From Mizuhopecten yessoensis (lineage: Eukaryota), in contig NW_018403786.1 in assembly GCF_002113885.1 (NCBI RefSeq), positions 792,776 through 856,775 on the forward strand: a stretch of DNA of 64,000 nt, in the 5' to 3' direction. Position numbers and translations under genes: made by a program. Shown here piece by piece: positions 3,739-36,886 of the stretch. The first letter of the stretch is position 1, and each line of letters begins with the position of its first letter. The notes below the pieces were generated by a model, which was given only the letters and a program-made list of their open reading frames with translations, did not search any database and had not been told where the DNA came from.

Positions 3739-6700
3739 ATGGATGTGACCCGCATATTATTTTGCATGCTATTGACTTGGACAAACACTGCTACCATACA
3801 GGGTAAGTAACTGTTTGGTAACAATACCCTGTATGCTATCAAATCACAATACACATATAAAAATCAAAATATTTACCGAAGAAGGATGGAGATTGGAATA
3901 CATTGTGTTTTTATTGTACTATTATATCAAAAGAAAATACGACCTTCAGATCGTAAATAATATATTTTGGGAAAAAACACACTCTAATAATAAAATATCC
4001 TTAACAATTAACTTAAATAAAATGCCTCATTTCTTCCATAATCCCACAACAAAGGGAAAATGGAACAGCGTGCGATTATTTCACTTTTTCATGTTAAACC
4101 AAATTTTATCTTTTATCCCTTGCAAGAAATATTTCTTTTCAGCGGTTTCCATACCTAGCCACCCATCTTCAAATGGCAATGGCTGTAGCAAGAACGTTAA
4201 AACCTTTACAAGAATTCAAAATTAACATTGAACAAACATACTATGATTTTCTCAATGTGTATTATAATTAACCTTTTAATAAAATTTCACTGTGTGGTAT
4301 TATTTTACTGACTGATTTTCTTTGCTTCGTGATATAATATCACATTGTTGTGTTATTCACTGTGTGACGTTTTTTGCTCTGTGATATTATTTCATACTTT
4401 GGTGTTACTGTAGAATTGTGCTGTTTTTTAAAATGAGATATTACATCTAACGGGCGTTCGTTGTCAAAGTTTCCTTCCGTTTGAAACAAAATGATATATG
4501 ATAGAAAAAAAATAAGTCAATTGTTCTGCTATAGATTTATTTATTACCTTTAAATATGTTTGATATTTATGAAATTTTCTACTTGCTATTTTTTGATGGT
4601 CATTAATTCATATTACCAATAGTTTATAAAAATGCTCACCTTAATATTATAATACAATTTTGTTTCCCCCTCATTGTTACTGTTTTTCAGGTTATACGAT
4701 AACCTAAATCACGGAAAACAAAAAAAGTCATGATGTCGTTTAGTTGTAGTTGCTTCGCCATGAAATAACTGCGCATTGTTGTGTTTTGTGCAAAATGATT
4801 TACTTTTTAATAAACGAGTTTTCTTTTGCTATCGACTAATGAAATGTTGTGTGTCTGCTAAATTAATTTGTTTTTAGATTATACGGTATGTACTGAAAAA
4901 CCTGTGTGCACTTTGCAGAAGTCCGCGTAACGGTTTATGAACAAAATAGCACACGGATTTTTCGGTATATACAACATAATCCTAAATATATCCCGGTTAT
5001 TCCTTAATATCCATAATAATTCACGATTTTGTTCACAGCTCGGGAGGGGCCACCAGTTATTCTTTCCCAGTCTTTTCGCGAGGTCTACTACACGTTCTAC
5101 ACATCAAGCGTCAATCTCTCATGTACAGCAGACGGCTCATTTCCACTGACGTAAGTGAGGTGTAGGATTGATGTTACTGTTTTGTCGTCCTGATAAAAAG
5201 GTAGCTACATCCTGGCGATTTGGCTAGGGCGAAAATCTTGGAGCTAAGGTACCAAATGGCAGTTGTTACAATATTGTTAAACACGCTCTCTTGTACATAG
5301 TATGTATGCTACTTTATCCAGCAGGATCAATACCCCTTTTGTATATTGTGTAAATGAGCACCTGGTGTATATTCAGTAATGGTAATACATATCAAACCTT
5401 GCCTTATCTTCTTATTGTGTATACATTCAATATAGTGTGTATGTTCAATTTTACCACATCATTTTTGCTTTCTCCAGAACAAGTTTAATATATGGTAATG
5501 TGACTATATATTTATAAACTCTCTCCAAAACAGGTGGAACTTATGTTAAATGTAACCATATCTTTATTAGTTCTCTCTCAAACAAATGGAATGTATGTAA
5601 AATATAAATGTAATTTGTTAAAGCATACATGTATCTTAATACGGTGCGGATGGTTCATAAATTGTGAACATGTATTTATGTGTAGCTATAACGATTGGTA
5701 AAAGCTTTCTTCTCTCACAACTCTTTTGGTTGTTTTATTTTGTTTTATTGCAGCTTTGTTTGGGAACATTATGGAGCGGTAATCCAGAATATCACCGTAT
5801 ATAATTATGTATCAAATTTAACACTGAAACCTCAAGAAACATCATGGGTCGCAGGCACATACACTTGCATTGTGGGAAATAGGTATGGCCGTACGTCGAG
5901 TGACAGTATGGAGTTAACGGAAGTTACGCTATACCCAAGCACCACTCCTAGTGACGTAGTGTACGAATATCCTCCTCTGAACATGCCATATACGTTACGG
6001 TGTGACCATCCGAACAGTAACATAAAACCGGAAGTACAATGGATCAAGACCACAAAAACCGGAAACACGCCACGACGGATACAATATAATGAACGGATCA
6101 CATACGACACAACTGGTATGTCTTGATGATTACAAATTTCTATAATTTCATAAATATCAACAATCGGTTTCATATTCAAAATGTGGGTGTAAGAGCTTAT
6201 TTAGTTCGATGTCGTCATTTGCATGATTAATACATTGCAATTGCATACATGACGTCATTATTCCTCCGCCGACTACGTTTTCTTAAAATTAATACGGGGT
6301 AAAAAATGAATTGCAGGTAACGCATATGCTGATGCGGAGAACGAATATGTCTGCTATGTCTCACTACATTATTGTATAGGACGACTGATGTGGCCCATCG
6401 AAGCATCAGGGGTTTTCTGCTGCTTCTTCTACTCAACATAATTGCCACTGAAACACTAAGGACGCCCATATTTCTTTCTTCTTCCACATTTTTTCTTTTC
6501 GGTGTATATGGCAGCGTTTTGTATATTTTCGGTGTATATGTCAAAATAATATAACCGATTGAGGTGACATTCTTAAGTCAATGTTTCAGTGAGATAGCAC
6601 TTAACTATAGCCCTTGAGCTGCCCTATCATCTTAAGCCGCCGTCTGTGACCTATAAGAGGACACAAAACCCCAAAGCAACGCCTTGTTTACCTTGTTTGC

Positions 6701-9700
6701 CTTGTGGACCTATTCTTCCGCACAAATCCTCTTGATACCTTACATGTCATATACAGGCTTAAGAATGGTATTGATTGTACATTTATATAAAAACAAAAGT
6801 TTAAATTTGATGTATACAAAGACATCGGTTCAATCACTTGTCTAACTGTTTTATTTTTCAACAGGCAGTTTACATTTTGTGTACATCGTTACATCAGACA
6901 GAGGAGGGTACATGTGCAACATTTCCTACCCTGTCCTACAGTATTATATGCTTGGACCGACCGTCATTCTTGAACCAGAAGGTAAAGAAAATTAGTTTTT
7001 CTATAATCGCCAAATCCGCGAATGATAGTCCCAGCGAAAGCATCCTGTTTTCTAATAATGTAAATGCTTTATTTCGAAACATTATTGCCATATCAAGTTC
7101 AAATTAGCATGATTTAGACGCATTTGTATTAACGAGTTTTAAGTTGCTAAAACTATTGATTTTAATGTTCAATGGTAAACCACTGCCTTGACACAATATA
7201 GTATAGTTTTTATGATAATACAGTTTGAGCAAGCATACAAAACAGCAAGGTCTGTTGATTTTGATGTCCAATGGTTAACCACTGCCGTGTCACAATATAG
7301 TATAGTTTTTATGATAATACAGTTTGAGCAAGCATACAAAACAGCAAGGTCTGTATTTTTTCATCACTTCCATGACCTAGTTAAGTGACATATCCTGTAA
7401 TATAACAATAAGGATGTGCTGTTAACTGTCCTTGATGATTATTACCCTAGATAAATGATGACACACGTTCACGAACTGTTTGTCACTTGTAGACATGTAA
7501 CATGGCAGTATAAAACTTATCTATTCGACAAGTGAAGACTAATTTAACTTTCATTGTTATTACATTAGATACTGGATTCCAGCTGTCGACTGAATATCCT
7601 ATGTGGAATTCCGAGGAGTTCCCCACCGCACTGCGAGGTCAAAACCTAACGCTTAGATGTGTTTCTGGTGGAAAGTAAGCTAAACATGTACATTCACTAC
7701 CTTAGGCTATTCCCTACCTTACTGTGGCGTGCATTACCTCATAAAGAAATCCTTTAAAAGATGTTATGAATTGCTAATCAAATAATGGCCTGAAAGATAC
7801 ACAGGTGTGTATGCCTTCACAACAATCCTATACTTTACATTGTATAACAAATGCATCAACACTAGAGTCTTATCGAACTGATATATCATAAATCAAGTAT
7901 GTATATAAATTTACTTACTAGATACTTCTCTAACTAATAAACCAGTAATAAAACATTAGGTTTTCAGCAAACAGTGCTTGTCATAGGTTACCCCGAGTGT
8001 TCACATGGGCTTGTCATAAGTTACCCCGAATGTTCACGTGGGCTTGTCATAGGTTACCCCGAGTGTTCACATGGGCTTGTCATAAGTTATCCCGAGTGTC
8101 CACATGGGCTTGTCATAGGTAACCCCGTGTGTTTACGTGGGCTTGTCATAGGCTACCCCGAGTGGTAGCATGGGCTTGTCATAGGTTACCCCGAGTGTCC
8201 ACGTGGGCTTGTCATAGGTTACCCCGGGTGTTAACGTGGGATAGTCATATGTTACCCCGAGTGTTTACGTGGGCTTGTCATAGGTTACCCTGAGTGTTTA
8301 CGTGGGCTTGTCATAGGCTACCCCGAGTGTTAACGTGGGCTTGTCATAGGTTATCCCGAGTGTTAACGTGGCTTGTCATAGGTCACCCCGAGTGTTCACG
8401 TGGACTTGTCATAGGCTATCCTGAGTGTTAACGTGGGCTTGCCAAAGGTTACCCCGAGTGTTTACGTGGGCTTGTCATAGGTTACCCCGAGTGTTTACGT
8501 GGGCTTGTCATAGGTTACGTGGTCATGTTAATTTTTATTTCCACTGGTTTCTATTTCACCTTTGTTCCTTTCGTTTATAAATCAAAATACTGATAATCGT
8601 ATGTTGAAACTCCGTAGGCAAACAAAACCTCTCATTATTATTTCAGCCCGATTCCACAAATTAGATGGCAGAAGATTGAGGAAGATGGTACCGTTTTACC
8701 AGCGTTAAATCAGAATATTCAGGACCACGGTCGAAGTCTGACATTTCAGAACCTTAAATTTACAGATCGTGGGGAATATGAATGTACCACGGAAACACAA
8801 ACTATCCGGTTTGATGTGACAGTAGAGAGTGAGTGGTCTTATTTGCTCTGCTAGAATTTCAATATTATTTATTCAAACGTACGACAGCCCAGATCGTCCG
8901 TGAGGTGTAGAACGTGTGAAGCTCCAGTACCCATGAGGTCTATAGTGCGCGATAGAGCAGGTCGGCAATGATATCATCAGTGTGTGAAGTCTCGTTCAAC
9001 CAGACGCTTGATCACCTGTTTGGCGTTGCTTGTGCAGACAACAAGAGTCTGGTTGAACGAGACTACATTGTGTGACAAGCCTTGCTCGCTGTGAGGTCAA
9101 GTTCGTTTGAATGACCTCCAGATTTTGAGTGTTTGACACTCACGATCAATCGTGAGGTTCAGATTCGAGGACAACGTGGTCGGCAATGAAGTATAAAGCA
9201 TTTGATAATCCTCGGTTGGTTTCAATATAAAAAGTATATATGTGACAGACGACCTTGAGATAAGGAAAATGCAATAACCCCAGTTGCATCAAGAGCATGT
9301 GACCGTCCCCGGTCAGCCGTGAATATTAAGAAGTTCTGAACGTACGCCCCGTTTGAACATTTTAAAAGACACTTACCCTTCCAGAACACCTTGCATTATC
9401 ATTGACTTTTTCAGGGTTTCTTTGTAAATGTTTGATTATTCTGCATTTAGCCTAGATTTAATGTATTAAGTTCGGGTAGTAGTTTTGTTTACATTGAGCG
9501 TTTTTCACTGCAATACTGTTTGATTTGCAGAATACGAAAGGGGATTTCACCGATATATGTTGTTATTCGTATAAAAAATCGTTTAAAAGCAAGTACATTT
9601 TAGAACTCGCATAATACGAAAACGTTATCATAAGAAACAATTATGTGATTGTCATAAAACATTCCACACCTTCAACGATCTTGATGTAGCGTCTGTCATT

Positions 9701-12700
9701 TAGACATGTAGCCCTCTTAAGCTGAACTGTTGTTGTGCTATGTAAACATCAAGATGTCCTTATAGATGTCAAATGATATTTTGTTTTCAAAGGTACACCA
9801 TTTTGGATAGAAAAACCTAAACCAATCATCACTTCAGCAGGTACTGCAAATCCTCTCCCGTTTTTCTGTAGAGCGTACGGGGAACCTGTACCTGATATCT
9901 CGTGGTATATCAACACTGTGTCAGCGGCTGGTACGTATGTTCATACCGGAAGGAACATAAGGACTTAACTACATAAAGACTATGATTACAAATGGTTCAT
10001 AGACAGATGTTAATTGTCTTCAAGCAGATTTCCAAAAGTACAATTTATACTTAAAAACTGAAGAGTTACATTTTTTATTATTCAAACACATACATCAACA
10101 GTGTGACATTTTTTATTCAGGAAATACCTCCTCACCTATTTGGAGTGTGGGGGGTGGGGAGTATTAACTGTACATACTACGATGTATATGTTTTTATGAC
10201 AATATTGCAATAGAACATAAAGATACATTCTGATTTCATCTACAAATATGCCTTCTATCATTCCAGATCAAAATAATAACTTGGCGATTTATCATGTCAA
10301 CTCTACGCAAACCATCGACATGGCTTATAGTGTACTATACGTTACTACAAACGTCTCATTCTCCCTCAAATGTGTGTGTCACAATAACCACGGAAGTATT
10401 TCCTCCTACAGCTACCTATACATAACAGGTAAGCCTACGTGAGCATAACAAGTAAGCCTGCGTAAATATAACAGGTACGCTTACCTATCCATAACATGTA
10501 AGCCTACATAAACTAAACAGGTAAGCCTTCTTAAACACAACAAGTTAGCCTACCTTTCCGTAACGGGTAAGCCTATTTAAACAAAACAGGTACACTTACC
10601 TGTTCATGTAACAAGCTCGCCTACCTTTACGTAACAGGTAAGCATTTTAAGATAAAACAGGTACACTTATCTGTTCATGTAACAAGCTCGCCTACCTTTT
10701 CGTAACAGGTAAGCCTATTTAGATAAAACAGGTACACTTACCTGTTCATGTAACAAGCTCGCCTACCTTTTCGTAATGGGTAAGCCGATTTAGATAAAAC
10801 ATGTACACTTACCTGTTCATGTAACAAGCTCGCCTACCTTTTCGTAACAGGTAAGCATTTTAAGATAAAACAGGCACACTTACCTATTCATGTAACAACA
10901 TATCAGTAAACCTACTTATACATCACAGATATGATTTTCGGTAAATAACATATATGCATCGTAGTATCGTTCCTTGCTCATTGCACGAATACAAAGAAAC
11001 AGTACCTTCATGTAATTCTTATATTCCAGAACGGGTTACTCATCCACCAACAATTATACCAACCATTAAAACAACTCATATACCGTCCTCAAAGACAACT
11101 CCAGCATCAACCACGGCATCAACCACGGCTTCAACCACGGCATCAACAACGGCATCAACTACGACATCAACCCCATCTCCAACTACACGACCAACTCCGG
11201 CACCAACCTCTAAGCAACCTGCAGTGCCAACTCAAGCACCGAGTGAAGTGTCTGACAGCTCAAACACCGCCGTGATAGGTGGGGCGGCGGGAGCTGGTGT
11301 TGGTGTCGTCATCATTATAATCGCTGTGGTCTACTGTATCTGGTCTAAACGAAGGTACACTTGATTTTCGGTTATATACTGACATGTTATTTTTCTGTAA
11401 TTATACAATAGTGTATTCAGAATACGACAACGAGTGATCATGATCAAACTAATAAAAACAAGAATACATGACATATGTTTAATGCTGAATGAATCTTACT
11501 ATATATTCATCATGACCAAAAGGAATATACATTTTAGCTATATGAAATATATACACCAAAAGTTATAATATATGTATCTATATATTTCCGATAAACTAAT
11601 TAGTTACTGCATAGACTGTATCAGTAACTGGTAATATGTATTAGTGCGCTCTTTTGACTGTAAACTACTTACCCGGGTGTTGATTTTACCTGTGTGGTTT
11701 ACAGATTCTCTGATGGAATTTTACGTTCGTCATCGCTTGATTACCAGTTAAGATACTAAAACATTATTTATTAGATATTAATCAGTACTCTAGTTTTTCA
11801 CATTCAAATTAAATTTTTTTACGAACCCACCACCTCCCGTTTCACAAGTATTTTTTTCTCAATTGGGTTTTCCACCTTTCTGGCCCTTGGCATTATCATG
11901 GAGTCCCAGATGGACGAAACAGTTCCATAATGCAGTGTAATGTTTTTGGCATACACTAGTGTACTGTATATTTAAATACATTTTACATGTACAATTATCT
12001 GTGTCTTACGTTGCTCTTTCTGTTATGATTTCTGCTGAGTTTACTGATGTCGTTACCGTATCTACACCTGCTATGTCCTCTCGTATCTCTTCTGATGATG
12101 TCCTTTTATGATGGCACTTTGATATGTTAAATTTCGTAGATGATAACCATCAAAACCATTCAGGAAGTAACCTAACATTTTATTCCATATCGCCGGCTAG
12201 GCAAAGCATGGACCCAGTACAGAAGTATGATGCTAGAATGGGCTATGGTAACAGAGGATACAGCGACGTAGAAATGGACCGTGTGCAAAAACGCGATCAT
12301 AGGAGGGTGCATAAAAGCGAAATCCTACAAAAGGTATGGCACGATTTCATGTAAAGTAGTAAGATAGGTTATGTCAATAGGATGGACATTTCGTTTAAAT
12401 TCAAGTAACGACAAAACGTATTTAGTGTGTACGGCATTGGAGCAACCGATGACTTGGAAAATTGAAGTTTTATATAGCCATGTTTTTAGGTTTTTAATCT
12501 TGCAACGACTACCTTCAGAGTATTGTGTAACATCGGATTCTTGTTAAGTTAATTGTTTTAAATAGAAAACACATTGGCTCGAGGCTTCCTGTTTAAACTT
12601 CATTCAATATGTATAACATACTTATAACAACATAAACGTTGGAGGGATGGGGAAACAAGCGTATAGCTCTGGTTTGATCTTTTCTCAAATATTCGTCAAG

Positions 12701-13361
12701 AATGAATGTGCAATTTAACAGACATGAGATTTATTATTATTTCATTGAAATTTCACATATTGTATTTACATTTTCAATTGTTTAGCCACACAAGGAAGGA
12801 AAGGGAGAGACCTATACTGGTTTAACTAATGAGAGGGAGAACAAAAAGGGAAATGTGTATGAGCAACTTGGTGGTACCAATAATCCAGCCAATGTAGAAA
12901 ACAAGCCAGAGGAGGCAGAATACTGCTATATTAGTGATGCAGACATTTTGAAGCCTCAGAGACAGTCCCACATTCCTACCTCTGAATCAGCAGCCCCGAC
13001 AGGCGTTTTCAATAAAGAGGTGCCAAATTCTACCAAAACAAAGACACCGGGTGTTAAAGAAGACCCACGAACATCCATGACGAGACCGAACTCTAAACCC
13101 CTACCCGAGGTGCCTCCGACTCAGAATCCGCCATACGGTAAAATTGGTCGTTTCTCCAGTGGCAAGTACTCTGCAGTTGGTAACCCGGCGTATAGCAGTC
13201 GGGTCCCTCAACTCACACAACCAAAACAATTTTCCGCCCTTCCAACGTACATGGAACCTATCACAACAAAACTGTCCGGTCCAACTACCAACCAGGAACC
13301 TGTACCAATAACGCCTGACGATGGTTATTTTAAACTGGAACTCAGGCACGTGAAGATGTGA
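3739..13361 (+). CDS. Gene A: 4-Ig (L1/neuroglian/hemolin-like) type I membrane receptor with ITAM-like tail, 758 aa. Coding exons 3739-3802, 5039-5150, 5754-6115, 6865-6981, 7569-7674, 8647-8828, 9793-9930, 10267-10428, 11030-11354, 12201-12333, 12786-13361
   Basis: All introns are GT-AG with matching phases; total 2277 nt in frame. Signal peptide MDVTRILFCMLLTWTNTATIQA. Ig Cys/Trp pairs: LSCTADG..W..YTC; LRCDHP..W..ERITYD..GSLHF..YMC; PTALRGQNLTLRCVSGGNPIPQIRW..HGRSLTF..DRGEYEC; TPFWIEKP..FCRAYGEPVPDISW..CHNNHG. Then ASTT stalk, TM AVIGGAAGAGVGVVIIIIAVVYCIW-SKRR. Same exon structure as gene C. Confidence 0.9.
7155..7354 (+). repeat. 99-bp tandem duplication
   Basis: Two near-identical copies of CACAATATAGTATAGTTTTTATGATAATACAGTTTGAGCAAGCATACAAAACAGCAAGGTCTGT with their flanks. 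Confidence 0.9.
7975..8522 (+). repeat. 33-bp minisatellite, ~16 copies
   Basis: GGGCTTGTCATAGGTTACCCCGAGTGTTTACGT. Confidence 0.95.
8988..9064. mobile_element. Very short MITE-like inverted repeat
   Basis: AGTCTCGTTCAACCAGACGCTTG ... CAAGAGTCTGGTTGAACGAGACT, 23-bp arms with one mismatch. Confidence 0.65.
10412..10925 (+). repeat. ~23-bp minisatellite with 71-bp higher-order unit, starting at an exon end
   Basis: CTACCTATACATAACAGGTAAGC variants; TACACTTA recurs at 10591, 10662 and 10733. Confidence 0.85.
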
Positions 13362-25832: not shown

Positions 25833-25924
25833 TGATAATCTATAAATATTCAAATATGTTTCACTCTTGCTTTGTACTTGTGAAACATATCGTTTTCTGT
25901 CGTACTCATGAACTAAAAATAGTA

Positions 25925-26300: not shown

Positions 26301-26490
26301 AATATCATTTGTTCCTATAAGCTATAACCCCCTGCCTTTATGAGAGCAAACATTTATGTTATATGTAATCATTCCCCGATATCTGCCTCTGTACAAGTGA
26401 TTCCATGCTTATAAAATATTTCTTGGTTAAGATTCGATTTTCCTTATTAATGTTTTTACACATAAACTGCCCTTTTTTTATTTCAGAATA

Positions 26491-28568
26491 ATGACAATGT
26501 TGCAAACTGTCTGTAGAATGATTGTTATGTGGGCCATCTTTGATATTGGTCATGGTAAGTGTATTTCAAACCGAAATTACTATCTATCATATTTTTCATA
26601 CTCTTTCATATTTAGTTTACACTTTCTATATATTCAATCTCAGAGTCGGTATGTATTGCCCACATCAAACATAAACAAAATTCGGCAAACGGTTTTTACA
26701 AATAGATCGCCATAACATGCACTTTGTAGAATACTAGCCATGTACAAAAAAAAAGCCATACAGGCTTTACTTGAGGTAGATCATTACCGTTTTACCATCG
26801 ATCCAGATGGATACTGAGGGTTTCTGCTGAAGATTTTGGGTTTGTTTTCAATTGCAGTGTCATCTTCTCATGTTGATCTACGTATACAAAATGATTTAAA
26901 AACCAAAACTGTTAAATGATAATGCTTATCACAGAAATAGTCAACGTACTCGTCAATTGGAAGTATATTTTAAGCATTCACAGTAAAAAAAACCACCTTA
27001 TATTTCCAGCGTTATGCCGTCCAACTTGCTCACGTAAACTAAAGCATCAATTGAATAGTCAGTCTTAAAAAATGTTTCAGTTACATTTTCGTATCATTCA
27101 ATAATTTACCTTTATATTAATGATAAATAGCAACAAATCTAAATCGTAGAAAAATGAATCATTGAATAATTTACTTTATTATTTGATATTTAAATGTAGC
27201 AAATCTGAACGTCAGAACTATTCGATACAAATCGATTACTGAATAGATTAAATGCTATTATCTTTTAACAGCACGGAACGGTCCCCCAAAGATACTGCTC
27301 CAGCCTCAACAGTCATTGTACTACTCGGCTGTCTCTAACTCTAGTATAATGTTAACGTGTGGCGCGGACGGGTCTACCCCTATTAGGTAAGTCATAATAA
27401 ACATAATAATTTATCATAACCTAGTTCGTAGGTCGTCTCAAAGCGGTTCACAAATAAGTATCCGTGGTTATAGGGCCTTTGCAACCAGCCGACATCTTTC
27501 TCGACTCCCTGGGCAGCATACAACCGGTGCTGCCATGTCGGCGCTCACAGGTAGCATTCAACAATTCTAGCACTGCCCAACCACGTACTCATTTACAGCT
27601 GAGTAGACTGGAACAAGCGGAGTAAAGTATCTTGCTCAATGATACAACACAGTGCCGTGCCGTGACTCGAACCCGCAATCCTTCGGTCACGAGCCCGGCG
27701 TCCTACCGCTGGACTACCGTGCCTCCTAACATGTGTTGTTGACGTCTGGTATCTAGCCATGGGTTATATCATTGTGGTGTCTGCGCGTGTTTGGTCAATC
27801 ATGAATCATCTTTGGCGTCACTGTGTTGAAATGCCTTACAAAGGAATTTGGGGTATATCTTAACTTGGTCAAGTTACTGTAATAATGGCACATATTTGTT
27901 TTGGTGTTCACTGACCTTGACCTACTTTTCAGTTTTGCAACAACTTTGACATTTGTTGAACATATCAAACATACATTTTATACCTAGAAATTTGCGCTTG
28001 GCTGTTTACATTCAAAATATCTAAATTTGTTCAAAACAGTTTTACTTATCTTGTCTTTGGACCCCAAGTACACAAGCGTCTGTTATATTTGACTTGCAGC
28101 TGATGTTTCCACTTCATGCCATGTTGTCGGACCGCATAACAGTAACCGATATTAAACCAAACAAATTATTTACATTTTTTCTAATACAAAAATGCTATCG
28201 TTATATAGTCTATGAATAAGAAATGAGAATCGACCTTGATAAAATCTCAAGTTAGAGACAGTATAATCAACAAGGTAGCATAAATGATCAAACGTCTTTA
28301 TTGTGTGGTCGACGAAGTTGAACAGAGAATAAATTTATCAAGTAATGCTAAGTCCTCAATGTGGGAACTCAGATAGTGGCAAAGAACCAAACGGTGTAAT
28401 TACGAGATAAATCAAAATACATGACGTCCTTATCGCACAAAGCTGTTTTCCAAAGATTGTCCATGTGAGATCTTAATGATCATCATCACCATCTCCATCG
28501 CTCGAAACCTTGTGTTTAATGATAATGATTATATATTTATTTAACCAGGGTTACATATGGCCCTGCAT

Positions 28569-28603
<35 letters not shown>

Positions 28604-31600
28604 AGCATGACAACAATTTAAGATAACAGTATAAAAATGCAGTACATGGTATCATCACAGTCAATGTAACTTAAAATTTAGTAATCCTAAAGTATAATTC
28701 AATATTGAATATAATTCAATATAGCACACAAGTGTCACTGAATGATATGGTTAAAGCACTATCATTGTCAAATATACATGTAATGCTTATATAGCAAAGG
28801 GTGAAAAATGACAAGATATACACTAATATAGTGTGTATCAAAATGAGACAATGAAGTCGGTGTTGCAAGTGTTGTCAGTTGTCGACATTTGTCACGATTG
28901 TTTTTTATGTTGGACTTGATAAAAGGCTAATTGAAGAAATGCATACAATTCATTTTTTTCCCAGCCTCTGGAATAATCTTTTACATAATCCATCAGTATC
29001 CTGTACTATTCGTTCAATTTGAACGCGTGATTGTTTTTTGAATTTTGCAGATTATCATGGGAAAGGAATGGAGTCCCTGTAAAGTTTGAAAAATTCGAAA
29101 ACGGTGGCGGCGTTTTTGATTTAAATCATGCAATAAATAACCCCGCCCAGACCGACGAGGGAGAATATATTTGCTACGTCAGCAATGACCTCGGCCACAC
29201 CATGACGTACCCAATTCAGCTAACACAGGCAGTGTTAGATGATCATTCTAAACAGAATATCGTTTACGATGAGACAGCTGAACAGGGCAGTCCTTTTACA
29301 CTACCATGTGAAATCCCTTACAGCGTACCGGAACCGGAAGTATACTGGGTGAAGATTACTACCACCAGTAGTGTAACACCGCAGAACCGAATTCAATATG
29401 ACGAACGAATTACATCAGATATCAACGGTAACTTTGATATTTTGATTACATTTGTTAACATTTCATTTGATAACAGTATTATATTGCTTATCTATTGCAT
29501 CAAGTCAAATATTTATAGAGTATTATTCGTAGCGTCTCATATCTGTGAATGATAACTTTATTAATTAGTTTTTAAACCTGTATCTCTCGTTTATTGTTAT
29601 CATTGTTTCTCGCATCTCCGACAGAGATAGTCCACATAATACCCCATGCTAGATTTTTCTATCTCGTCCTATCTGTCTGGTACCTTTACGTGATATTTCG
29701 CGGAATTTTGACACTGCAGTGTATTCATCCACGCGTTAACGGCTTGAAATCGACAATATGCATTATAAATATTCTGTTTATCGTTATTTGTATTATTCTA
29801 ATGTTGTTGGATATTTGATGTTGTAGATAGAAAATATTCTACATTGAGAAATACCTAGTCTTTTTTGTAAGGACGGACTAGATTTTACGCGGGATCATTC
29901 AACTGTAGCTTTAGTAATAAAGAGGCTAATTTTGTATGGCCCCAGACGGGATACTTATAGTCTTTAGCAAAGTTTAATAGGGTTTTTTTCGAACGAAAAG
30001 GTGCAAAAAAAAATCAATTACCTATAACTGAGCCAGTCGAGTTATCTTAGTCTCGGGCTAGGATTCTGTAACATCCTAACCTCGGCTTACGCCTCGAATC
30101 TTAACCCTCGACAGAGATAACCCGAACTCACTCAGTTACAGGTTATAGGTTTTATTAAAGACTCTGGTAAGTTGTCACAGATATACTCATTTTAATAAAC
30201 ATTTTTATAAACTATACTTTATTAATGTATTAAGTTATTAGTTTACACACATTTCAATTAAGGATATTCATTATTTGTTAACACCTACAATAATCACTGG
30301 AAAAGGGACGTTAGGCAGTTTCATGTAAGTCCATGAAGTATGCTAAAAAGTAAACATTTCATACAAAATATTACCCTTTCCTTTATTAAGAATTCACTAG
30401 TGGAACTACAATCTTGTTTAGCTCAGAAGAAGTGAAAATATATGTCAAAAGTGTCAGTACGAAAAAAATGTTTCTAAATGGAACAATACAAATTGAAGTT
30501 CTGCAAATTTATTTTGTATTGTATACCCACCAAATCCCGGTATTATGAGGCTGGTTCAGCTAAGAGCTAGTTTGTGCATTCTGACATCTATTGGTGTGAT
30601 GTAAAATAGATACCATGGTATTTGAATGGCACTTTTATAGCTGATTTCACAGTTACAAAAGGCTTTACATACGCGTGCTTCCAAATAAAAGAGTATAGGC
30701 AATAGACACGGGCTAACGGGAAAACTGCATGAAGCACAACTATCTTAAACCTTCCTTTTCTAAAAGGTTTTGTAGTTTGGCTTAAAAAAATGAAGATATT
30801 AAAGGGAAGATGAAATTCAGTTTATCATTATTTGATATATAATAACAAGATCTAGTTTTATCAAAGGTTACCATTTTGACGTAATGAAGACTGTTGAATT
30901 CTTTATTTCGGTTTAGGTAACCTTCACGCCCTCTTCATTGAGAACTCAGATACTGGAAGGTACAGATGTGTCATCTACAATTCATTGCTCCAAAAAACAA
31001 CCTATGGCCCGATCTTCAACTTACAGACCACAGGTAAAATACACAGTTATTGACGTATGTTGAGATAGATCCTATATTTCGGTAGCCAATACGTAAGTAG
31101 TTTTATATCAATTCTACAACTTACTATAGTAAAAAATGACGCCACAAAATATCACGAATGAGTTAAGCTATTGTAAAATGAAGTTTTACTTTTTTTTTGC
31201 ACACTATCATATTTAAAAAAAAAAGTTTCCTGGTAACCCTCTACAAGTAAAATCGATATTTCACATTGGAAAAAAAAAATCAGAATATATTTAAGATTAA
31301 CCTAAACGGAAGGGTTTTGATATATACACGGTTTTATTTCCCCGTCACATTTCTTCGTTCAATTTTATTAAATACTTCTGAATTAAATATGATATATTGA
31401 GCTCATTGCGCTTTAAACATTTATTATTCATAAAAGGTACCTATAAATACATTTACTTCAGTTGGAAGTCAAACCACTGATCCCGAACTGATATGGAACT
31501 CGGACGAGTTCCCGGTAGCGTTACACGGAAGTGACGTCATGATCAGATGTATCGTTGGAGGCAGGTGAGAACGTTATGCATGTTTATAGGCGTGTGCATG

Positions 31601-34600
31601 TCTTTTTAAAGGGCAACAAATACATTAACTTCAATGATTAGATAAAAGAAATTAATCAATAATGTTATAATTTACATGTAAAATGGACTAAATTTCTTGA
31701 TACATACAAAATCATTTCTCACATTGATTAGTTAATGATGATGTTTCATTGGCTCTTTCGAATCACTTGGTTTTTGTCTGTTATTGCAGTGAGTGTTACG
31801 TCTATCTTATTTGTTTGTTTGTTTGTTTGTGTATTCCCGCTGTTCCTAGTGTTAATTTTTCGTATCAACTTCGATTCTTAAGATTTATATGTGTTGACGC
31901 TCTGGTATTTCTTCTTCTATTTCAACTTAATTTAAATGGATATGTTTCAAATAACAAATTCAATCGAGTTGATATATTTTGTCGCTACACCAGACCGCTA
32001 CCTCAAGTCGAATGGTACGACGACACGGGAGCCCCGATGAGATTGAATCAGGTGACAGATTACGGCAGAACCCTGATGTTGAGGAATGTCCGGTTTACTG
32101 ACGCTAGGTGGTATCAGTGTAGCGTTCCTGGAACAACTTTTACTGGCGGCGTCAATTTTCAACTTACTGTCGAAAGTAAGTTTCATACACGCCTAATGCA
32201 TAAAGTGGTATGATACATATTTAATTAAACGTTGTAATCATTATCGCAGAGCACGTTACATTTACAAATCACTTTTTGCACCGATGTATGATTAAACAAC
32301 GTATTCACGATAATTGACCATAATGAATAATATTATAAAGATTGTTGTTTTAATTGGCGATTGTCTCCCTTTGTAAATAACAGTGAAAACATTGATTTCG
32401 CGTGGAGAAATTTATGTGGAGACAATATTTCATAAAGCAAAATATGAAATGGTTCAAAGGTTGAAAGACTGACAATGAAGAGAAAACCACTGACGTGATG
32501 TAATCTTTGTCCGCTAGAGTTACTAATACCTGTATCTTTACACAGAGAGCCCCTCTTGGATCAGAAAACCTAATCCAATCAAAGCAAATGTTGGGGAACA
32601 GGTTAGCTTCAACTGCAGTGCTTCCGGTGTACCCGAACCTACTATCACGTGGTACATTGACACGACTCCAGTCGCAGGTATTTACAAACTGTACTCAGCC
32701 AATCATATGGCCCATGTTCCTTACCTCATTGGTGCTGTTACGTATGGAGTTGTCTGTTGGGATCTGCTTTATTCCCTGTGACGCCGTATATGATTAAATA
32801 ATGTCATAAAAACTAATATTTGCATTAATTTCTACAACATTTGCAATTTTCAGAATTAAAGAATAATTAACACCAGTTTTATAAAAATATGTTTAATCGA
32901 GTAAATAATAATTTATGTTATAAACTGTAAAATAAAACTCTATTACTAATGTCATCATTTTAAAAATGGCAAAGCACAAAAAGGAAATGAGCTAGAATAC
33001 AGAATGTGGGATTGACATAAACTGATATGTGCAATCAACTGTTCAACAACTTTGAAAAATTAAAAACTATATTAAGAATATTTACATATTTCTAATATTA
33101 TGTTATATGTCCATAAATGGTAACGTTAATAATTCCGATTAATAACACGCAATTGTTCATATCAAAACTTATAATATAGGACACGTACTTGGTTATGAGC
33201 ACTGCTGACATTTGATCCATACTACACTTGCTTGTTTATATTAATAATTACGATATATGACACGTAATTGTTTATATTAATGATAAAGATACATTGTATA
33301 TGACCATTCTCAGTTTGTATCACCAGGTGACCTTCATTCCGGTATCTGACTATAGCCCAGGTTCCGGTATCTGACTATAGCCCAGGTTTCGGTATCTGAC
33401 TATAGCCCAGGTGTCTCCTTTGTCATTATAGACGTTCCGGCCAATAAAAAACCTTCCCGAATAGAGAACACACAATTAACAGGTTCCACAACGAGCATTC
33501 TCCACTTCATGGCAACTTCGTCCTTTACTGTCATCTGTGAGGCCTCCAACAGCCATGACTATATATGGGATGGGACCTTCCTATACGCCGAAGGCAAAAA
33601 CTTTGATTCTTCAATATAACCGATGATGTTGAAATAATGTCCAAATACATTTTCCATTGTTAATATCCCAGATGTGATCATTTTAGTATTATGATAAGCT
33701 TTTTAACATCGTTTTGTGGATTCTTTTATTTCGATGTAAACTGTATTTTTGTAATGATTTACTTATACAAATCTTATATCGAAGGTATTTAATAAATTTC
33801 TGTAAGCATATTGTGTAATTCCTGATCAACCTTACTTAATGTTTACAGGACTACCACCGACTACGTCTACACAAGCTCCTACACAAGCCCCGACCACGCC
33901 TAAGCCGGCTGGTCAGTCGTCTAACTCCGCCGCGATCGGCGGGTCGGTGGGAGGAATCATCGCTGTTGTCGTCGCCATCGTCGTTGTCTTCTGTGCCTGG
34001 TCTAAACGAAGGTGTTTATAAGATGTTGAACCTTTTCTTCTCAGGTTTTATCCTGTTTATAAATATAAGTTCATAATATAAAATCATCAATAGAATATAT
34101 ACTGTGTCATGATCATCATATAGCAAGAGTATTATTATGATCTTCCTTATAAAGGATCTATGATAACCCATATGATTGATATATGATACCCATAACTAGG
34201 ATATATGATAACCCATAAGATTTATATTTGATAACACATAAGATTGATATATGATAACCCATATGATTGATATATGATACCCATAACTAGGATATATGAT
34301 AACCCATAAGACTTATATATGATAACCCATAAGATTGATATATGATAACCCATTAGATTGATATATGATACCCCATAATATTGATATATGATAACCCATT
34401 AGATTGATATATGATACCCCATAAGATTGATATATGATAACCCATAAGATGGATATATGATAACCCATAATATTGATATATGATAACCCATAAAATTGAT
34501 ATATGATAACCCATAATATTGATATATGATAACCCATAAGATTAATATATGATAACCCATAAGATTGATATATGATAGCCCATAAGATTGATATATGATA

Positions 34601-36886
34601 ACCCATAAGATTGATATAAGATATCCATAAGATGGATATATGATAACCTATAAGATTTATATATGATAACCCATAAGATTGATATATGATTACCCATAAG
34701 ATTGATATATGATAATCCATTAGATTGATATATGATACCCAATAAGATTAATATATGATAACCCATAAAATTGATATATGATAACCCATTATATTGATAT
34801 ATGATAACCCATAAGGTTAATATATGATAACCCATAAGATTGATATATGATAACCCATAATATTGATATATGATAACCCATAGTATTGATATATGATAAC
34901 CCATAAAATTGATACATGATAACCCATAATATTGATATATGATGACCCATAAGGTTGATATATGATAACCCATAAGATTGATATATGATAACCCATAATA
35001 TTGATATTTGATAACACATAAGATTGATATATGATAACCCATATGATTGATATATGATACCCAATAAGATTAATGTATGATAACCCATAAGATTAATATA
35101 TGATAACCCATAAGATTAATATATAATAACCCATAATATAGATATATGATAACCCATAAGATTGATATATGATAACCCATAATATTGATATTTGATAACA
35201 CATAAGATTGATATATGATAACCCATATGATTGATATATGATACCCAATAAGATTAATGTATGATAACCCATAAGATTAATATATGATAACCCATAAGAT
35301 TAATATATGATAACCCATAATATAGATATATGATAACCCATAAGATTGATATATGATAACCCATAAAATTGATATATGATAACCCATATGATTGATATAT
35401 GATACCCAATAAGATTAATGTATGATAACCCATAAGATTAATATATGATAACCCATAAGATTAATATATGATAACCTATAAGATTAATATATGATAACCC
35501 ATAATATAGATATATGATAACCCATAATATTGATATATGATAACCCATAATATTGATATTTGATAACACATAATATTGATATATGATAACCCATATGATT
35601 GATATATGATAACCCATAATATTGATATATGATAACCCATAATATTGATATTTGATAACACATAATATTGATATATGATAACCCATAGGATTGATATATG
35701 ATACACAATAAGATTAATATATGATAACCCATTAAATTTATAAAGGATATCCCAAAGGATTGATATATGAAACCCGTAAGATGGATATATGATACTCCAT
35801 AAGATTAATATATGATATCCCATAAGATTGATATATGATACCCCATCAAATTGATTTTTGATAACTCATAAAATTGATATATGATTACCCATAAGACTGA
35901 TATTTGATAACCCATAGAATTGATATATGTTAACCCATAAGAGTGATAAATGATAACCCATACGATTGATAACTGATCGCATTATTTTTCATCCATATAA
36001 AGATATCATTAACAGTAATAGATCGTTTAAACTGGCATAAATGAAAACTCGAGTAAAAATGAAACCATTAAAATAATATATATTACAGGAACAGAGGCCA
36101 ACCAGAAACCAAACCAAACGTCACCATGGCCTATAGAAACCGTGGTTGTATTGATGTGGAACAGGTTTGTAAATATAAAATATATCTTTATTCTGGGGTT
36201 TTTTGGGTTTTTTTAATAATTGATCATTGTAATTTCAATAAATGGAAAACAACATGAATTATTCTATTGACATATTTCGTGTTTAATAATCAATTATGGT
36301 GTTATTAATAGTTTCGTTATTCGATGGATGAAATAAATGCACTGAATAACACGAACAAGGTATACTATCAGACAAATTCACAAGTACAGTAAGTAAATGG
36401 ACCTTAGAACCATTCCTAATCATATTTCCATTTCAGCCGACGGCATCTGGAGGCAAAGGGGAGCCCTACTCCGGTCTTTCCAATGCCAGGGATAAAGCGC
36501 CACAAGGAAACGTGTATGACGAGTTGGACGCTGCAAGTAATGGCGCAAGAGCCTTAGATAAGAACGAGGAAGCAGAATACTGCTACATCAGCGATAGTGA
36601 TATAAAAGCGGCACAAAGACAGTCGAAAAACCCCATCCCATCAGTTAGAAACAACAAGTCTCCAGGAGCATCCAACTCAGAATCCAGTCCCGTATCAACT
36701 TCTGTTGGATACAATTCCTCCAGTGGGAAAAAGCTGAGTCACTTCCCAAGTGGTAAATACTCATCAATGAATGACCCTATGTACCAAGGGCAGACCGGAA
36801 ATCAAGATTCCCCGTCATCACCAGAGTACTTGGAACCGAGAACCCACGAGTATTTCGTGCTGGAACCAGAACATACCAGCCTGTAG
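26491..36886 (+). CDS. Gene C: 4-Ig (L1/neuroglian/hemolin-like) type I membrane receptor with ITAM-like tail, 646 aa. Coding exons 26491-26554, 27272-27386, 29051-29427, 30917-31033, 31462-31564, 31994-32175, 32546-32677, 33432-33593, 33849-34011, 36089-36164, 36437-36886
   Basis: Total 1941 nt in frame; one GC donor is required at 33594. Motifs: GPPKILLQP..LTCGADG, W..DEGEYICYVSNDLG, LPCEIPYSVPEPEVYW..YDERITSDINGNLH..DTGRYRC, ALHGSDVMIRCIVGGRPLPQVEW..YGRTLML..WYQC, SPSWIRKP..FNCSASGVPEPTITW..CEASNSH. TM AAIGGSVGGIIAVVVAIVVVFCAW-SKRR. Exon sizes 64, 117, 182 and 162 are identical to gene A. Confidence 0.9.
27392..27726 (-). mobile_element. tRNA-derived SINE
   Basis: Minus strand starts GGAGGCACGGTAGTCCAGCGG (A box) .. 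GGTTCGAGTC (B box), then conserved-core-like TTGAGCAAGATACTT and CTCAGCTGTAAATGAGTAC, a LINE-like tail GTGAACCGCTTTGAGAC and an AT-rich simple end. Confidence 0.85.
30021..30149. repeat. Imperfect palindrome (MITE-like) with central CTCGGCTTACGCCTCG
   Basis: TAACTGAG..GAGTTATCT..GGGCTAGGATT pairs with AATCTTAACCC..AGATAACCC..CTCAGTTA. Confidence 0.55.
33337..33412 (+). repeat. 25-bp tandem repeat x3
   Basis: TTCCGGTATCTGACTATAGCCCAGG. Confidence 0.9.
34160..35975 (+). repeat. 23-bp satellite, ~78 copies, in gene C intron
   Basis: GATAACCCATAAGATTGATATAT. Confidence 0.97.

What the first reader, a model, noticed from the sequence alone, without database searches (positions are those of the whole stretch)
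3739..36886. Tandem cluster of hemolin/neuroglian-like 4-Ig receptors with ITAM-like tails plus an Ig-less adaptor paralog: candidate invertebrate immunoreceptor system
Seen: three co-oriented paralogs with conserved intron positions; A and C have exactly four Ig domains, a mucin-like stalk, TM and Tyr-rich tail, while B has the same parts minus Ig. Knowledge: the Ig motifs (ERIT.D..G.LHF, ALRG..L.L.C..GG.P.P.I.W, P.WI.KP) match L1CAM/neuroglian Ig1-4, the horseshoe module that also forms the lepidopteran immune protein hemolin. True L1 proteins add Ig5-6, FnIII repeats and a FIGQY ankyrin motif, none of which occur here. Inference: an L1-derived ectodomain was joined to an immunoreceptor-type tail and expanded into a receptor-plus-adaptor family, converging on vertebrate ITAM receptor complexes. 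Automated annotation would probably label these just neuroglian-like or uncharacterized.
Basis: partly seen in the sequence, partly recalled or inferred. Interest (0 to 1): 0.9.

Follow-up and report, generated by a model that had tools for sequence, protein, structure and literature searches.

The report
Scallop four-Ig receptors with ITAM-like tails
Three neighbouring scallop genes encode two membrane receptors with a four-domain, horseshoe-type immunoglobulin head and one head-less relative, all sharing a scallop-only tail full of conserved tyrosine signalling motifs, which makes them plausible but untested signalling or immune receptors.

Summary
The window is Mizuhopecten yessoensis (Yesso scallop) DNA, not human. 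On the + strand between 3739 and 36886 lie three co-oriented paralogs:
- A: 11 exons, about 749 aa.
- B: 4 exons, 214 aa, identical in length and exon content to XP_021359393.1.
- C: 11 exons, about 646 aa.

A and C share all ten intron phases. Both have a signal peptide, exactly four Ig domains, a Ser/Thr/Pro stalk, one TM helix and a Tyr-rich tail. B has the same parts without the Ig exons.

- An AlphaFold model of the Pecten maximus C ortholog (pLDDT 86.6) superposes on contactin, neurofascin, sidekick and hemolin horseshoes (TM 0.64-0.75), not on extended Robo (0.34).
- The module belongs to the horseshoe-CAM group, but nothing ties it to L1 specifically.
- All 11 tails examined keep ExYxx(L/I)-x8-13-YxxL, an ITAM-like pair, plus EYCYIS (EYSYIS in three P. 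maximus tails) and a C-terminal YxxLE in ten of them.
- The tail occurs only in scallops.
- The A-B-C order is conserved in three genera.

"Adaptor" in the DAP12 sense is not supported: there is no charged TM residue, and A and C carry the tail themselves. Immune function is untested. The closest known kind is oyster CgIgR.

The parts
3739..3802 (+). Gene A exon 1: ATG and signal peptide, ends in phase 1
   Evidence: Hydrophobic start exon with AGG|GTAAGT donor. A homologous exon is present in P. maximus L004.
5039..5150 (+). Gene A exon 2: first half of Ig1
   Evidence: Paralogous to C exon 2. 72% identical to P. maximus A.
5754..6115 (+). Gene A exon 3: second half of Ig1 plus first half of Ig2
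   Evidence: Pfam Ig_2/Ig_3/ig. tblastn to C exon 3, E 1e-14.
6865..6981 (+). Gene A exon 4: second half of Ig2
   Evidence: tblastn to C exon 4, E 2e-7. Same length, 117 nt.
7569..7674 (+). Gene A exon 5: first half of Ig3
   Evidence: tblastn to C exon 5, E 1e-8. Splice sites.
8647..8828 (+). Gene A exon 6: second half of Ig3
   Evidence: Pfam Ig_3/I-set. Same length as C exon 6, 182 nt.
9793..9930 (+). Gene A exon 7: first half of Ig4
   Evidence: Pfam Ig_3/I-set, weak. tblastn to C exon 7, E 2e-9.
10267..10428 (+). Gene A exon 8: second half of Ig4
   Evidence: tblastn to C exon 8, E 4e-4. Same length, 162 nt. CAG|GTAAGC donor.
11030..11354 (+). Gene A exon 9: Thr/Ser/Pro-rich stalk and TM helix (TM 11269-11343)
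   Evidence: Alignment A2. TM location. AAG|GT donor in phase 2, as in B and C.
12201..12306 (+). Gene A exon 10: short cytoplasmic exon
   Evidence: Needed to go from phase 2 to phase 0. Homologous to P. maximus P0003.
12786..13361 (+). Gene A exon 11: cytoplasmic tail and stop. Motifs: ITAM-like pair 12813-12869, EEAEYCYISDADI 12909-12947, NPAY 13182-13193, YFKLE 13326-13340
   Evidence: Alignments A1 and A4. Motif coordinates.
16318..16381 (+). Gene B exon 1: signal peptide
   Evidence: Found by scan. Identical to the start of P0001 = XP_021359393.1.
17301..17466 (+). Gene B exon 2: short Pro-rich stalk and TM helix (TM 17381-17455). No Ig exon lies between exons 1 and 2.
18219..18294 (+). 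Gene B exon 3: short cytoplasmic exon
   Evidence: blastn to C exon 10, 78% identity. Matches P0001.
18576..18914 (+). Gene B exon 4: tail and stop. Motifs: ITAM-like pair 18606-18665, EEAEYCYISDSDI 18705-18743, YLVLE 18879-18893
26491..26554 (+). Gene C exon 1 (coding start used by the orthologs): signal peptide. The GenBank model adds an upstream coding exon that begins at about 21110.
27272..27386 (+). Gene C exon 2: first half of Ig1
   Evidence: Matches P0011. Splice sites.
29051..29427 (+). Gene C exon 3: second half of Ig1 plus first half of Ig2
   Evidence: Pfam Ig_3/Ig_2/ig/I-set above cut-off. PDB hits to Robo2, neurofascin and hemolin.
30917..31033 (+). Gene C exon 4: second half of Ig2
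31462..31564 (+). Gene C exon 5: first half of Ig3
31994..32175 (+). Gene C exon 6: second half of Ig3
   Evidence: Pfam Ig_3..
32546..32677 (+). Gene C exon 7: first half of Ig4
   Evidence: Pfam I-set/Ig_3 above cut-off. In register with Ig4 of contactins and neurofascin.
33432..33593 (+). Gene C exon 8: second half of Ig4. GC donor (G|GCAAAA) at 33594. Read-through reaches a stop at 33617-33619.
33849..34011 (+). Gene C exon 9: stalk and TM helix (TM 33929-34000)
36089..36164 (+). Gene C exon 10: short cytoplasmic exon
   Evidence: (ortholog P0002 reads ...EQ|PTASGG).
36437..36886 (+). Gene C exon 11: tail and stop. Motifs: ITAM-like pair 36467-36526, EEAEYCYISDSDI 36566-36604, NDPMY 36770-36784, YLEP 36827-36838, YFVLE 36851-36865

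Best explanation
This is a scallop-specific (Pectinidae) tandem family of type-I membrane proteins.

Genes A and C encode, in order:
- a signal peptide;
- four I-set Ig domains predicted to fold back into the horseshoe seen in contactins, L1-family proteins, sidekicks, DCC, Dscam and hemolin;
- a Ser/Thr/Pro-rich (probably O-glycosylated) stalk;
- one TM helix with a conserved small-residue (GxxxG-like) face and a juxtamembrane cysteine;
- a 180-290-residue, probably disordered tail.

The tail carries an invariant series of tyrosine motifs: ExYxx(L/I)-x8-13-YxxL (ITAM-like), an acidic EEAEYCYISDxDI block, an NPxY-like site, YxEP and a C-terminal YxxLE.

Gene B encodes the same signal peptide, stalk, TM and tail without the Ig module.

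Most likely mechanism (inferred, not shown): the horseshoe head binds a ligand or another horseshoe and clusters the receptor. Src-type kinases then phosphorylate the tail tyrosines, and SH2/PTB proteins dock (a Syk/Shark-type tandem-SH2 kinase on the YxxL pair, a CED-6/GULP-type PTB adaptor on NPxY). This would drive adhesion-dependent signalling or phagocytosis, as in oyster CgIgR and Drosophila Draper.

B would add or titrate tail motifs, either by associating with A or C through the shared TM face or as a free LAT-like membrane scaffold.

What is shown: the gene structures, the paralogy, the domain content, the predicted horseshoe, the motif conservation, purifying selection and the conserved synteny.

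What is inferred: phosphorylation, binding partners, the cell type and any immune role.
For: Gene models and paralogy.

Identity of the locus: M. yessoensis NEDP02000459.1. B equals XP_021359393.1. Annotated C exons 1-8 equal P0011.

Four Ig and nothing else:
- Pfam on the exons and on ortholog P0002.
- An intronless 2378-nt transcript contig (Logan SRR26445938, L003) runs signal peptide, 4 Ig, stalk, TM, tail.

Horseshoe:
- The ectodomain profile gives one colinear stretch over Ig1-4 of neurofascin, contactin-1/-2/-4/-5, axonin-1, sidekick and hemolin.
- AlphaFold best model: pLDDT 86.6, pTM 0.70.
- Foldseek TM 0.70-0.75 and rmsd 4-5 A to sidekick-2, contactin-2/-4/-5, axonin-1 and neurofascin. 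TM 0.64 to hemolin. By contrast, 0.34-0.38 and rmsd 44 A to Robo1 and titin.

Tail:
- 14 invariant columns in 11 sequences, including four tyrosines.
- The ITAM-like pattern is present in 11 of 11, against 1.2-1.4% of shuffled tails.

Constraint: dN/dS is 0.28 for the Ig exons and 0.19 for the tail (A, M. yessoensis versus P. maximus), and 0.22 for B versus C.

Distribution and synteny:
- The tail profile finds only six clusters among 1.84 billion representatives. Five are named scallop proteins; the sixth is an unlabelled Logan contig.
- The A-B-C order is kept in P. maximus and A. irradians.

Precedents: CgIgR binds Syk through an ITAM (PMC6994640). The Draper tail combines an ITAM and NPxY (PMC6219719).
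Against: - There are no expression, phosphorylation or binding data.
- Pfam reports no family on the tails.
- The spacing of the YxxL pair (mostly 11-12, once 13) is at or beyond the long end of the ITAM range. Every YxxL/I also fits a YxxPhi sorting signal.
- Only one of the five AlphaFold models was confident, with six sequences in the alignment. The first attempt failed (pLDDT 58.6).
- The modelled protein is the P. maximus ortholog (70% identical), not the window's own product.
- In M. yessoensis the link between exon 8 and exon 9 of C depends on an unverified GC donor.
- dS is near saturation, so the dN/dS values are rough.
Confidence: 0.5

Rival explanations
1. These are adhesion or uptake receptors whose tail motifs are trafficking signals rather than signalling motifs. 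YxxL/I would act as AP-2 YxxPhi signals, NPxY as an internalisation signal, and the acidic EEAE...SDSD block as a casein-kinase/acidic-cluster sorting signal. The proteins would cycle between the surface and endosomes, as L1 does through its own YxxPhi motif. They could be neural or epithelial cell-adhesion molecules.
For: - The head is closest to neural CAMs of the contactin/L1/sidekick group.
- Every tyrosine motif found also fits a sorting consensus.
- The tails give no match to any Pfam family.
- That YxxPhi, NPxY and acidic clusters act as sorting signals is established knowledge, not tested here.
Against: - Sorting needs one or two motifs. Here five to seven tyrosines are conserved, with a fixed paired spacing and an invariant acidic residue two positions before the first Tyr.
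- One P. maximus Ig-less paralog has amplified the ExYxxL module seven-fold. That fits a docking scaffold better than a sorting signal.
- The family is lineage-restricted, tandemly duplicated and moderately fast-evolving, unlike conserved neural CAMs.
Confidence: 0.3
2. Gene B is a DAP12/FcR-gamma-type adaptor that pairs with A and C. The cluster would then be a receptor-plus-adaptor complex convergent with vertebrate ITAM receptor complexes.
For: - B is intact, under purifying selection (dN/dS 0.22), and present between A and C in three genera.
- It has a short ectodomain, one TM helix and the ITAM-like tail.
- The TM helices of A, B and C share a conserved small-residue face that could mediate association.
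Against: - There is no acidic residue in B's TM helix, no basic residue in the TM helices of A or C, and no cysteine in B's ectodomain for a disulfide-linked dimer.
- A and C carry the full tail themselves, so they do not need an adaptor.
- In the tail tree, B of M. yessoensis sits with the C-type tails rather than with the Ig-less proteins of the other species. Support is weak.
Confidence: 0.15
3. The Ig-less and four-Ig forms are prediction artefacts, decaying duplicates, or fragments of a true L1/neuroglian gene whose Ig5-6/FnIII exons were missed.
For: - The GenBank annotation of this scaffold splits C in two and gives A only 648 aa, against about 749 aa in the hand model.
- C exon 8 has a non-canonical GC donor.
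- In P. maximus the A gene is annotated only as a tail fragment, and a second A copy has a repeat-expanded TM exon.
Against: - All 26 exons are open, with consistent phases.
- Annotated orthologs in three other scallops are single 644-685-aa proteins with four Ig and no fn3.
- An intronless transcript contig shows the same architecture.
- dN/dS is well below 1.
- No further Ig or FnIII paralogous exon lies in the window.
Confidence: 0.04

Closest known systems
Contactin / L1-family (neurofascin, neuroglian) / sidekick Ig1-4 horseshoe module
   Same: Four N-terminal I-set Ig domains align colinearly and in register. The predicted fold superposes on them with TM 0.70-0.75. Each Ig is split by an intron.
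   Different: The module stands alone. There are no Ig5-6, no FnIII, no GPI signal and no FIGQY ankyrin motif. The tail is unrelated. No single one of these families is clearly closest.
Hemolin (lepidopteran immune protein, PDB 1BIH)
   Same: Exactly four Ig domains in a horseshoe. Profile match of 105 bits and TM 0.64. The GenBank model of M. yessoensis C is a 450-aa four-Ig product without a TM helix.
   Different: Hemolin is secreted and insect-specific. The scallop orthologs and the spliced model have a stalk, a TM helix and a long tail. Hemolin scores lower than contactins, neurofascin and sidekicks.
Oyster CgIgR (also called CgIgIT2): an IgSF hemocyte receptor with an ITAM that recruits Syk (PMC6994640; PMC11999971)
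   Same: A bivalve type-I receptor with several Ig domains, one TM helix and a D/ExxYxxL...YxxL motif in the tail. This is the same kind of system.
   Different: CgIgR has five Ig domains and a short-spaced ITAM. Its tail was not detected by the scallop tail profile, which found only scallop proteins. No Ig-less paralog is reported for it. The oyster protein has experimental support; the scallop family has none.
Draper / CED-1 / MEGF10 engulfment receptors (PMC6219719; PMC4503800)
   Same: The tail combines an ITAM with spacing in the 6-12 range, an NPxY site and many further tyrosines. Src kinase phosphorylates it, and Shark (tandem SH2) and CED-6 (PTB) read it.
   Different: The ectodomain consists of EGF/EMI repeats, not Ig. 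There is no sequence relationship. The resemblance is in motif logic only.
DAP12 / FcR-gamma / CD3-zeta adaptors and LAT-type transmembrane adaptors
   Same: B has a very short ectodomain, one TM helix, a juxtamembrane cysteine and a multi-tyrosine tail.
   Different: B has no TM aspartate and no ectodomain cysteine. It is a paralog of the receptors rather than a separate family, and the receptors keep the same tail.

Membership tests
L1CAM / neuroglian family | Six Ig domains | tested here: not met
   There are four Ig stretches only. Pfam on ortholog P0002, exon models and the intronless transcript L003 agree.
L1CAM / neuroglian family | Three to five FnIII repeats between the Ig domains and the membrane | tested here: not met
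   No PF00041 was found in P0002, P0009, P0010 or P0011. Ig4 is followed directly by a Ser/Thr/Pro stalk and the TM helix.
L1CAM / neuroglian family | Ankyrin-binding FIGQY-type motif in the tail | tested here: not met
   The pattern F[IV]G[QA]Y is absent from the tails of A, B and C. It is not seen in the 11-sequence tail alignment either.
L1CAM / neuroglian family | Ig1-4 forming a horseshoe | tested here: met
   Met by prediction only. The AlphaFold best model has pLDDT 86.6. TM is 0.72 to neurofascin 3P3Y against 0.34 to Robo1.
Hemolin | Four Ig domains in a horseshoe | tested here: met
   Profile match to 1BIH over Ig1-4. TM 0.64, rmsd 6.1 A.
Hemolin | Secreted, with no membrane anchor | tested here: not met
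   Orthologs and the spliced models carry a TM helix and a tail. For M. yessoensis C alone, a read-through product without a TM helix is annotated. Whether it is made is unknown.
Hemolin | Shared descent with lepidopteran hemolin or neuroglian (phylogeny of Ig1-4) | not tested
   No named reference sequences could be fetched with these tools. PDB ranking puts contactins, neurofascin and sidekicks above hemolin.
ITAM-bearing immunoreceptors | YxxL/I-x6-12-YxxL/I in the cytoplasmic tail, with an acidic residue before the first Tyr | tested here: met
   Present at the same place in 11 of 11 tails. Spacing is 8-12 in ten and 13 in one. Glu two positions before the first Tyr is invariant. The pattern arises in 1.2-1.4% of shuffles.
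ITAM-bearing immunoreceptors | Match to a curated ITAM profile | tested here: not met
   The Pfam scan of the tails at E up to 10 lists no ITAM family. That Pfam holds an ITAM model is my recollection, and very short motif models are insensitive.
ITAM-bearing immunoreceptors | Phosphorylation by Src-family kinases and binding of a tandem-SH2 kinase (Syk/ZAP-70/Shark) | not testable with these tools
   This needs biochemistry. Bivalves do have Syk (PMC6994640).
DAP12 / FcR-gamma type adaptor (for gene B) | Acidic residue in the TM helix pairing with a basic residue in the partner's TM helix | tested here: not met
   The TM helices of A, B and C contain no charged residue.
DAP12 / FcR-gamma type adaptor (for gene B) | Ectodomain cysteine for a disulfide-linked dimer | tested here: not met
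   There is no Cys between the signal peptide and the TM helix of P0001.
DAP12 / FcR-gamma type adaptor (for gene B) | Partner receptors lack signalling motifs of their own | tested here: not met
   A and C carry the same tail motifs.
Oyster CgIgR-type IgSF-ITAM receptors | Several Ig domains, a TM helix and an ITAM in one chain | tested here: met
   Architecture shown. Shared descent is not shown: the tail profile found no oyster protein.

The most novel reading that the evidence does not exclude
Scallops independently built a self-contained immunoreceptor system from a horseshoe CAM module. In this reading a recognition head can be made either as a soluble, hemolin-like four-Ig protein or as a membrane receptor from the same locus, through a weak GC donor after exon 8 of C. 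It would signal through an ITAM-like, Draper-like tail to Syk/Shark-type kinases. Stand-alone Ig-less chains (B, including a P. maximus version with seven tandem ExYxxL modules) would serve as signal amplifiers. This would be a convergent counterpart of vertebrate receptor/signalling-chain complexes.
Probability: 0.15. Interest if true: 0.8.

Novelty: new variant of a known kind. Interest (0 to 1): 0.5.

Why it matters
Few invertebrate IgSF receptors with ITAM-type tails have been studied, such as oyster CgIgR. How such receptors arise is an open question in comparative immunology.

This family offers a clean case. A horseshoe four-Ig module, otherwise known from neural adhesion molecules and insect hemolin, is joined to a lineage-specific multi-tyrosine tail. 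The genes are duplicated in tandem and accompanied by head-less paralogs. The arrangement is kept in three scallop genera.

If the tail signals through Syk/Shark-type kinases, the cluster would be a tractable model for three questions:
- how adhesion modules are recruited to immune or phagocytic signalling;
- how signalling-only chains originate by loss of ligand-binding exons;
- how disease resistance might be studied in farmed scallops.

If the motifs are only sorting signals, the family is an ordinary lineage-specific adhesion molecule.

Tried and rejected
- Exon-by-exon PDB searches gave only generic I-set hits, with Robo2, titin and MDGA1 on top. They could not place the module. The five-sequence ectodomain profile was needed.
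- The first AlphaFold run (alignment A3, including the signal peptide) gave pLDDT 58.6. Its Foldseek TM scores of about 0.23 were uninformative. The second run (A6, mature ectodomain plus one distant relative) succeeded.
- Word-indexed homolog searches with the ortholog, the ectodomain profile and a mixed alignment with A-exon fragments never retrieved the annotated A-type proteins. The mixed alignment A5 was badly stretched by MAFFT. The 648-aa GenBank product of A was therefore not compared with the hand model of about 749 aa.
- A named-reference phylogeny (L1, contactin, sidekick, hemolin) could not be built, because no tool returns those sequences by name.
- The literature search for the locus and protein identifiers found nothing.
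- The idea that B is a very recent copy of C was rejected. Only exons align, at 75-78% identity, introns do not, and dS is about 1.
- The idea that the neighbouring kinase gene might be a Syk/Src-type partner was rejected. It is closest to Ser/Thr kinases such as DAPK, Aurora and ULK.
Exons were searched singly by reference and the joined step was left out. Full-length work used database proteins (P0001, P0011 and the orthologs). only checked frames and junction codons.
- N runs (14992, 38849-39328, 45187) were left untouched.

Full report
**Origin and scope**

The window is Mizuhopecten yessoensis (Yesso scallop) scaffold NEDP02000459.1. The protein encoded by the middle gene is identical to XP_021359393.1 / OWF55867.1, and a fetched locus from that scaffold overlaps the window. 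It is not human.

N runs at 14992, 38849-39328 and 45187 were left as they are.

Exons were searched one at a time by reference and the joined step was left out. Where a full-length protein was needed I used database proteins returned by the tools.

**The observation**

Stop-to-stop ORFs and an internal tblastn show three co-oriented paralogs on the + strand and no further copy in the window. Splice sites and phases were worked out by hand and checked for frame and junction codons.

- Gene A has 11 exons (3739-13361, about 749 aa).
- Gene B has 4 exons (16318-18914, 214 aa).
- Gene C has 11 exons (26491-36886, about 646 aa).

A and C share the phase series 1,2,1,1,2,1,1,1,2,0 and identical lengths for exons 1, 4, 6 and 8. 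Each Ig domain is split by an intron.

The three TM exons all end AAG|GT in phase 2.

Pfam places Ig_3/I-set on the Ig exons. The stalks are Thr/Ser/Pro-rich and the TM helices are uncharged.

B matches the database protein P0001 exactly in exon content. Exons 1-8 of C match P0011, the annotated 'neural cell adhesion molecule L1-like'.

**One complication in gene C**

Exon 8 of C ends in a GC donor (G|GCAAAA). The GenBank annotation reads through to a stop at 33617-33619 (450 aa, four Ig, no TM). It then calls a separate 232-aa gene for the TM and tail (33839-36886).

Orthologs in Argopecten irradians, Pecten maximus and Ylistrum balloti are annotated as single 644-685-aa proteins. I therefore take the single-gene model as most likely and the read-through product as an open possibility.

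**Relatives elsewhere**

A profile of the three tails was scored against 1.84 billion representative proteins. It found only six clusters:
- five named scallop proteins from M. yessoensis, P. maximus and A. irradians;
- one unlabelled transcript contig.

Names given by pipelines are 'neuroglian-like', 'hemicentin-2-like', 'L1-like', 'elastin-binding protein EbpS' and 'uncharacterized'. No paper mentions the loci.

The transcript contig (L003, Logan SRR26445938) is intronless. It reads signal peptide, four Ig, short stalk, TM, tail, with one frameshift near position 1350. At least in that species no extra Ig or FnIII exons are spliced in.

Synteny is conserved:
- In A. irradians a 675-aa A-type gene, a 283-aa Ig-less gene and a 656-aa C-type gene lie in the same order and orientation.
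- In P. maximus there are an A-type gene (only its tail is annotated), a second A-type copy, an Ig-less gene and a C-type gene.

Rough Nei-Gojobori estimates give dN/dS of 0.28 for the Ig exons and 0.19 for the tail of A (M. yessoensis versus P. maximus). B versus C gives 0.22, with dS about 1. All three are therefore old, constrained genes. B and C align only in exons, at 75-78% identity.

**The head**

Single exons gave only generic I-set matches.

A five-species profile of the C-type ectodomain gave single colinear alignments over Ig1-Ig4 of:
- neurofascin (117.8 bits);
- contactin-2 (111.7 bits);
- contactin-1, -4 and -5, axonin-1, sidekick and Dscam;
- hemolin (105 bits in total).

Robo2 and titin scored through several shorter stretches.

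The first structure prediction was poor (pLDDT 58.6; TM about 0.23). The second used the mature P. maximus ectodomain (70% identical to C) with six rows. It gave pLDDT 86.6 and pTM 0.70 for the best model, though the other four models stayed at 52-62.

That model superposes globally on solved horseshoes:
- sidekick-2, TM 0.70-0.74;
- contactin-4/-5/-2, TM 0.69-0.75;
- axonin-1, TM 0.74;
- neurofascin, TM 0.72;
- DCC, TM 0.65;
- hemolin, TM 0.64;
- Dscam, TM 0.60.

These matches have rmsd 4-7 A over about 405-430 alignment columns. The model does not superpose on extended Robo1 Ig1-4 (TM 0.34, rmsd 44 A) or titin (0.38).

The head is therefore a horseshoe module of the contactin/L1/sidekick/hemolin group. 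Nothing singles out L1. It is not an L1 family member: four rather than six Ig, no FnIII, no FIGQY.

**The tail**

An 11-sequence alignment (A, B and C of the window plus orthologs) has 14 invariant columns, four of them tyrosines.

| Motif | Conservation |
|---|---|
| ExYxx(L/I)-x8-13-YxxL | at the same place in all 11; spacing within the 6-12 ITAM range in ten |
| EEAEYCYISDxDI | core E-Y-x-Y-I-S invariant |
| NPxY or N(D)PxY | exact NPxY in A-type tails and in Y. balloti |
| YxEP | most A- and C-type tails |
| YxxLE near the C-terminus | nearly invariant |

The paired pattern arises in 1.2-1.4% of shuffled tails. Pfam reports no family on the tails.

The logic resembles two known systems:
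- Oyster CgIgR has five Ig domains, a TM helix and an ITAM, and binds Syk (PMC6994640).
- The Draper tail combines an ITAM with 6-12 spacing, NPxY and many other tyrosines. It is read by Src42A, Shark and CED-6 (PMC6219719).

The same motifs also fit YxxPhi, NPxY and acidic-cluster sorting signals. That is the main rival reading.

**Gene B**

B is real, old and conserved in position. It fails three defining features of DAP12-type adaptors:
- it has no acidic TM residue;
- it has no ectodomain cysteine;
- its supposed partners carry the same tail.

What A, B and C do share is a conserved small-residue face (IGGxxGG) and a juxtamembrane cysteine in the TM exon. These features could support association or raft targeting; this is inference.

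The Ig-less proteins of other scallops have diverged. A. irradians has a Gly/Ser-rich ectodomain. P. maximus has seven tandem copies of a 17-residue ExYxxL module. This pattern fits a docking scaffold.

A tail tree separates A-type tails (100% support) from B/C-type tails but does not resolve B from C.

**Verdict**

The sequence observation is confirmed and refined. The horseshoe and ITAM-like parts of the interpretation are supported by prediction and conservation. The specific L1 origin, the adaptor analogy and the immune role are not shown.

The family is a new, scallop-restricted variant of a known kind (bivalve IgSF receptors with ITAM-type tails). It is of moderate interest until expression and phosphotyrosine signalling are tested.

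Noticed in passing
window 33594-33848 (and 33839-36886): Exon 8 of gene C has a GC donor. GenBank splits the gene into a 450-aa four-Ig product ending at 33619 and a 232-aa TM+tail product starting at an intronic ATG (33839). An AATAAA lies at about 33790 in this intron, which may be chance in AT-rich DNA.
   Followed up: partly
window 10539-10898: A 71-nt tandem repeat (5 copies) in intron 8 of gene A copies the last bases of exon 8 together with its donor (..AACAG|GTAAGC). This creates a row of donor-like sites downstream of the real one.
   Followed up: partly
window 34155-35971: A 23-nt satellite of about 79 copies fills much of intron 9 of gene C. It produces the long spurious minus-strand ORFs (GYHISILWVIIYQ...). 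AT content is high here (GC 0.25).
   Followed up: no
window 3340-3676 and 7976-8518: A 31-nt repeat (11 copies) ends about 60 bp upstream of the ATG of gene A. A 33-nt repeat (16.5 copies) lies in intron 5 of A.
   Followed up: no
window 48278-52328 (+): A protein kinase gene lies downstream of the cluster. One exon matches Pfam Pkinase (E 1.5e-15) and is closest to Ser/Thr kinases (DAPK, Aurora, ULK, NEK). It is not a Syk/Src-type tyrosine kinase.
   Followed up: partly
window 53236-55216 (-): Broken reverse-transcriptase ORFs (Pfam RVT_1, E 1e-8), most likely a decayed non-LTR retrotransposon.
   Followed up: partly
window 44511-46167: A C-rich 23/114-nt satellite with extreme GC skew (-0.66). 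It gives long Pro/Ser/Leu-rich pseudo-ORFs. A 26-nt repeat of 41 copies lies at 40403-41482.
   Followed up: no
L002:1257-2065 (P. maximus, second A-type copy): The part of the TM exon encoding AVIGGAVGGGIAVIT is tandemly amplified many times. The first A-type copy (L004 9248-9463) has one extra, out-of-frame copy. This may explain why the P. maximus A genes are annotated only as tail fragments.
   Followed up: no
P0006 (P. maximus Ig-less protein, L002:10001-16308): Seven tandem copies of a 17-residue unit (AVSDDKREPYTSLSTTT) multiply the first YxxL of the ITAM-like pair.
   Followed up: partly
window 19672-20001 (+): A 110-aa open frame between genes B and C has no Pfam match. By eye it looks like a transposon remnant, but this was not established.
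   Followed up: no
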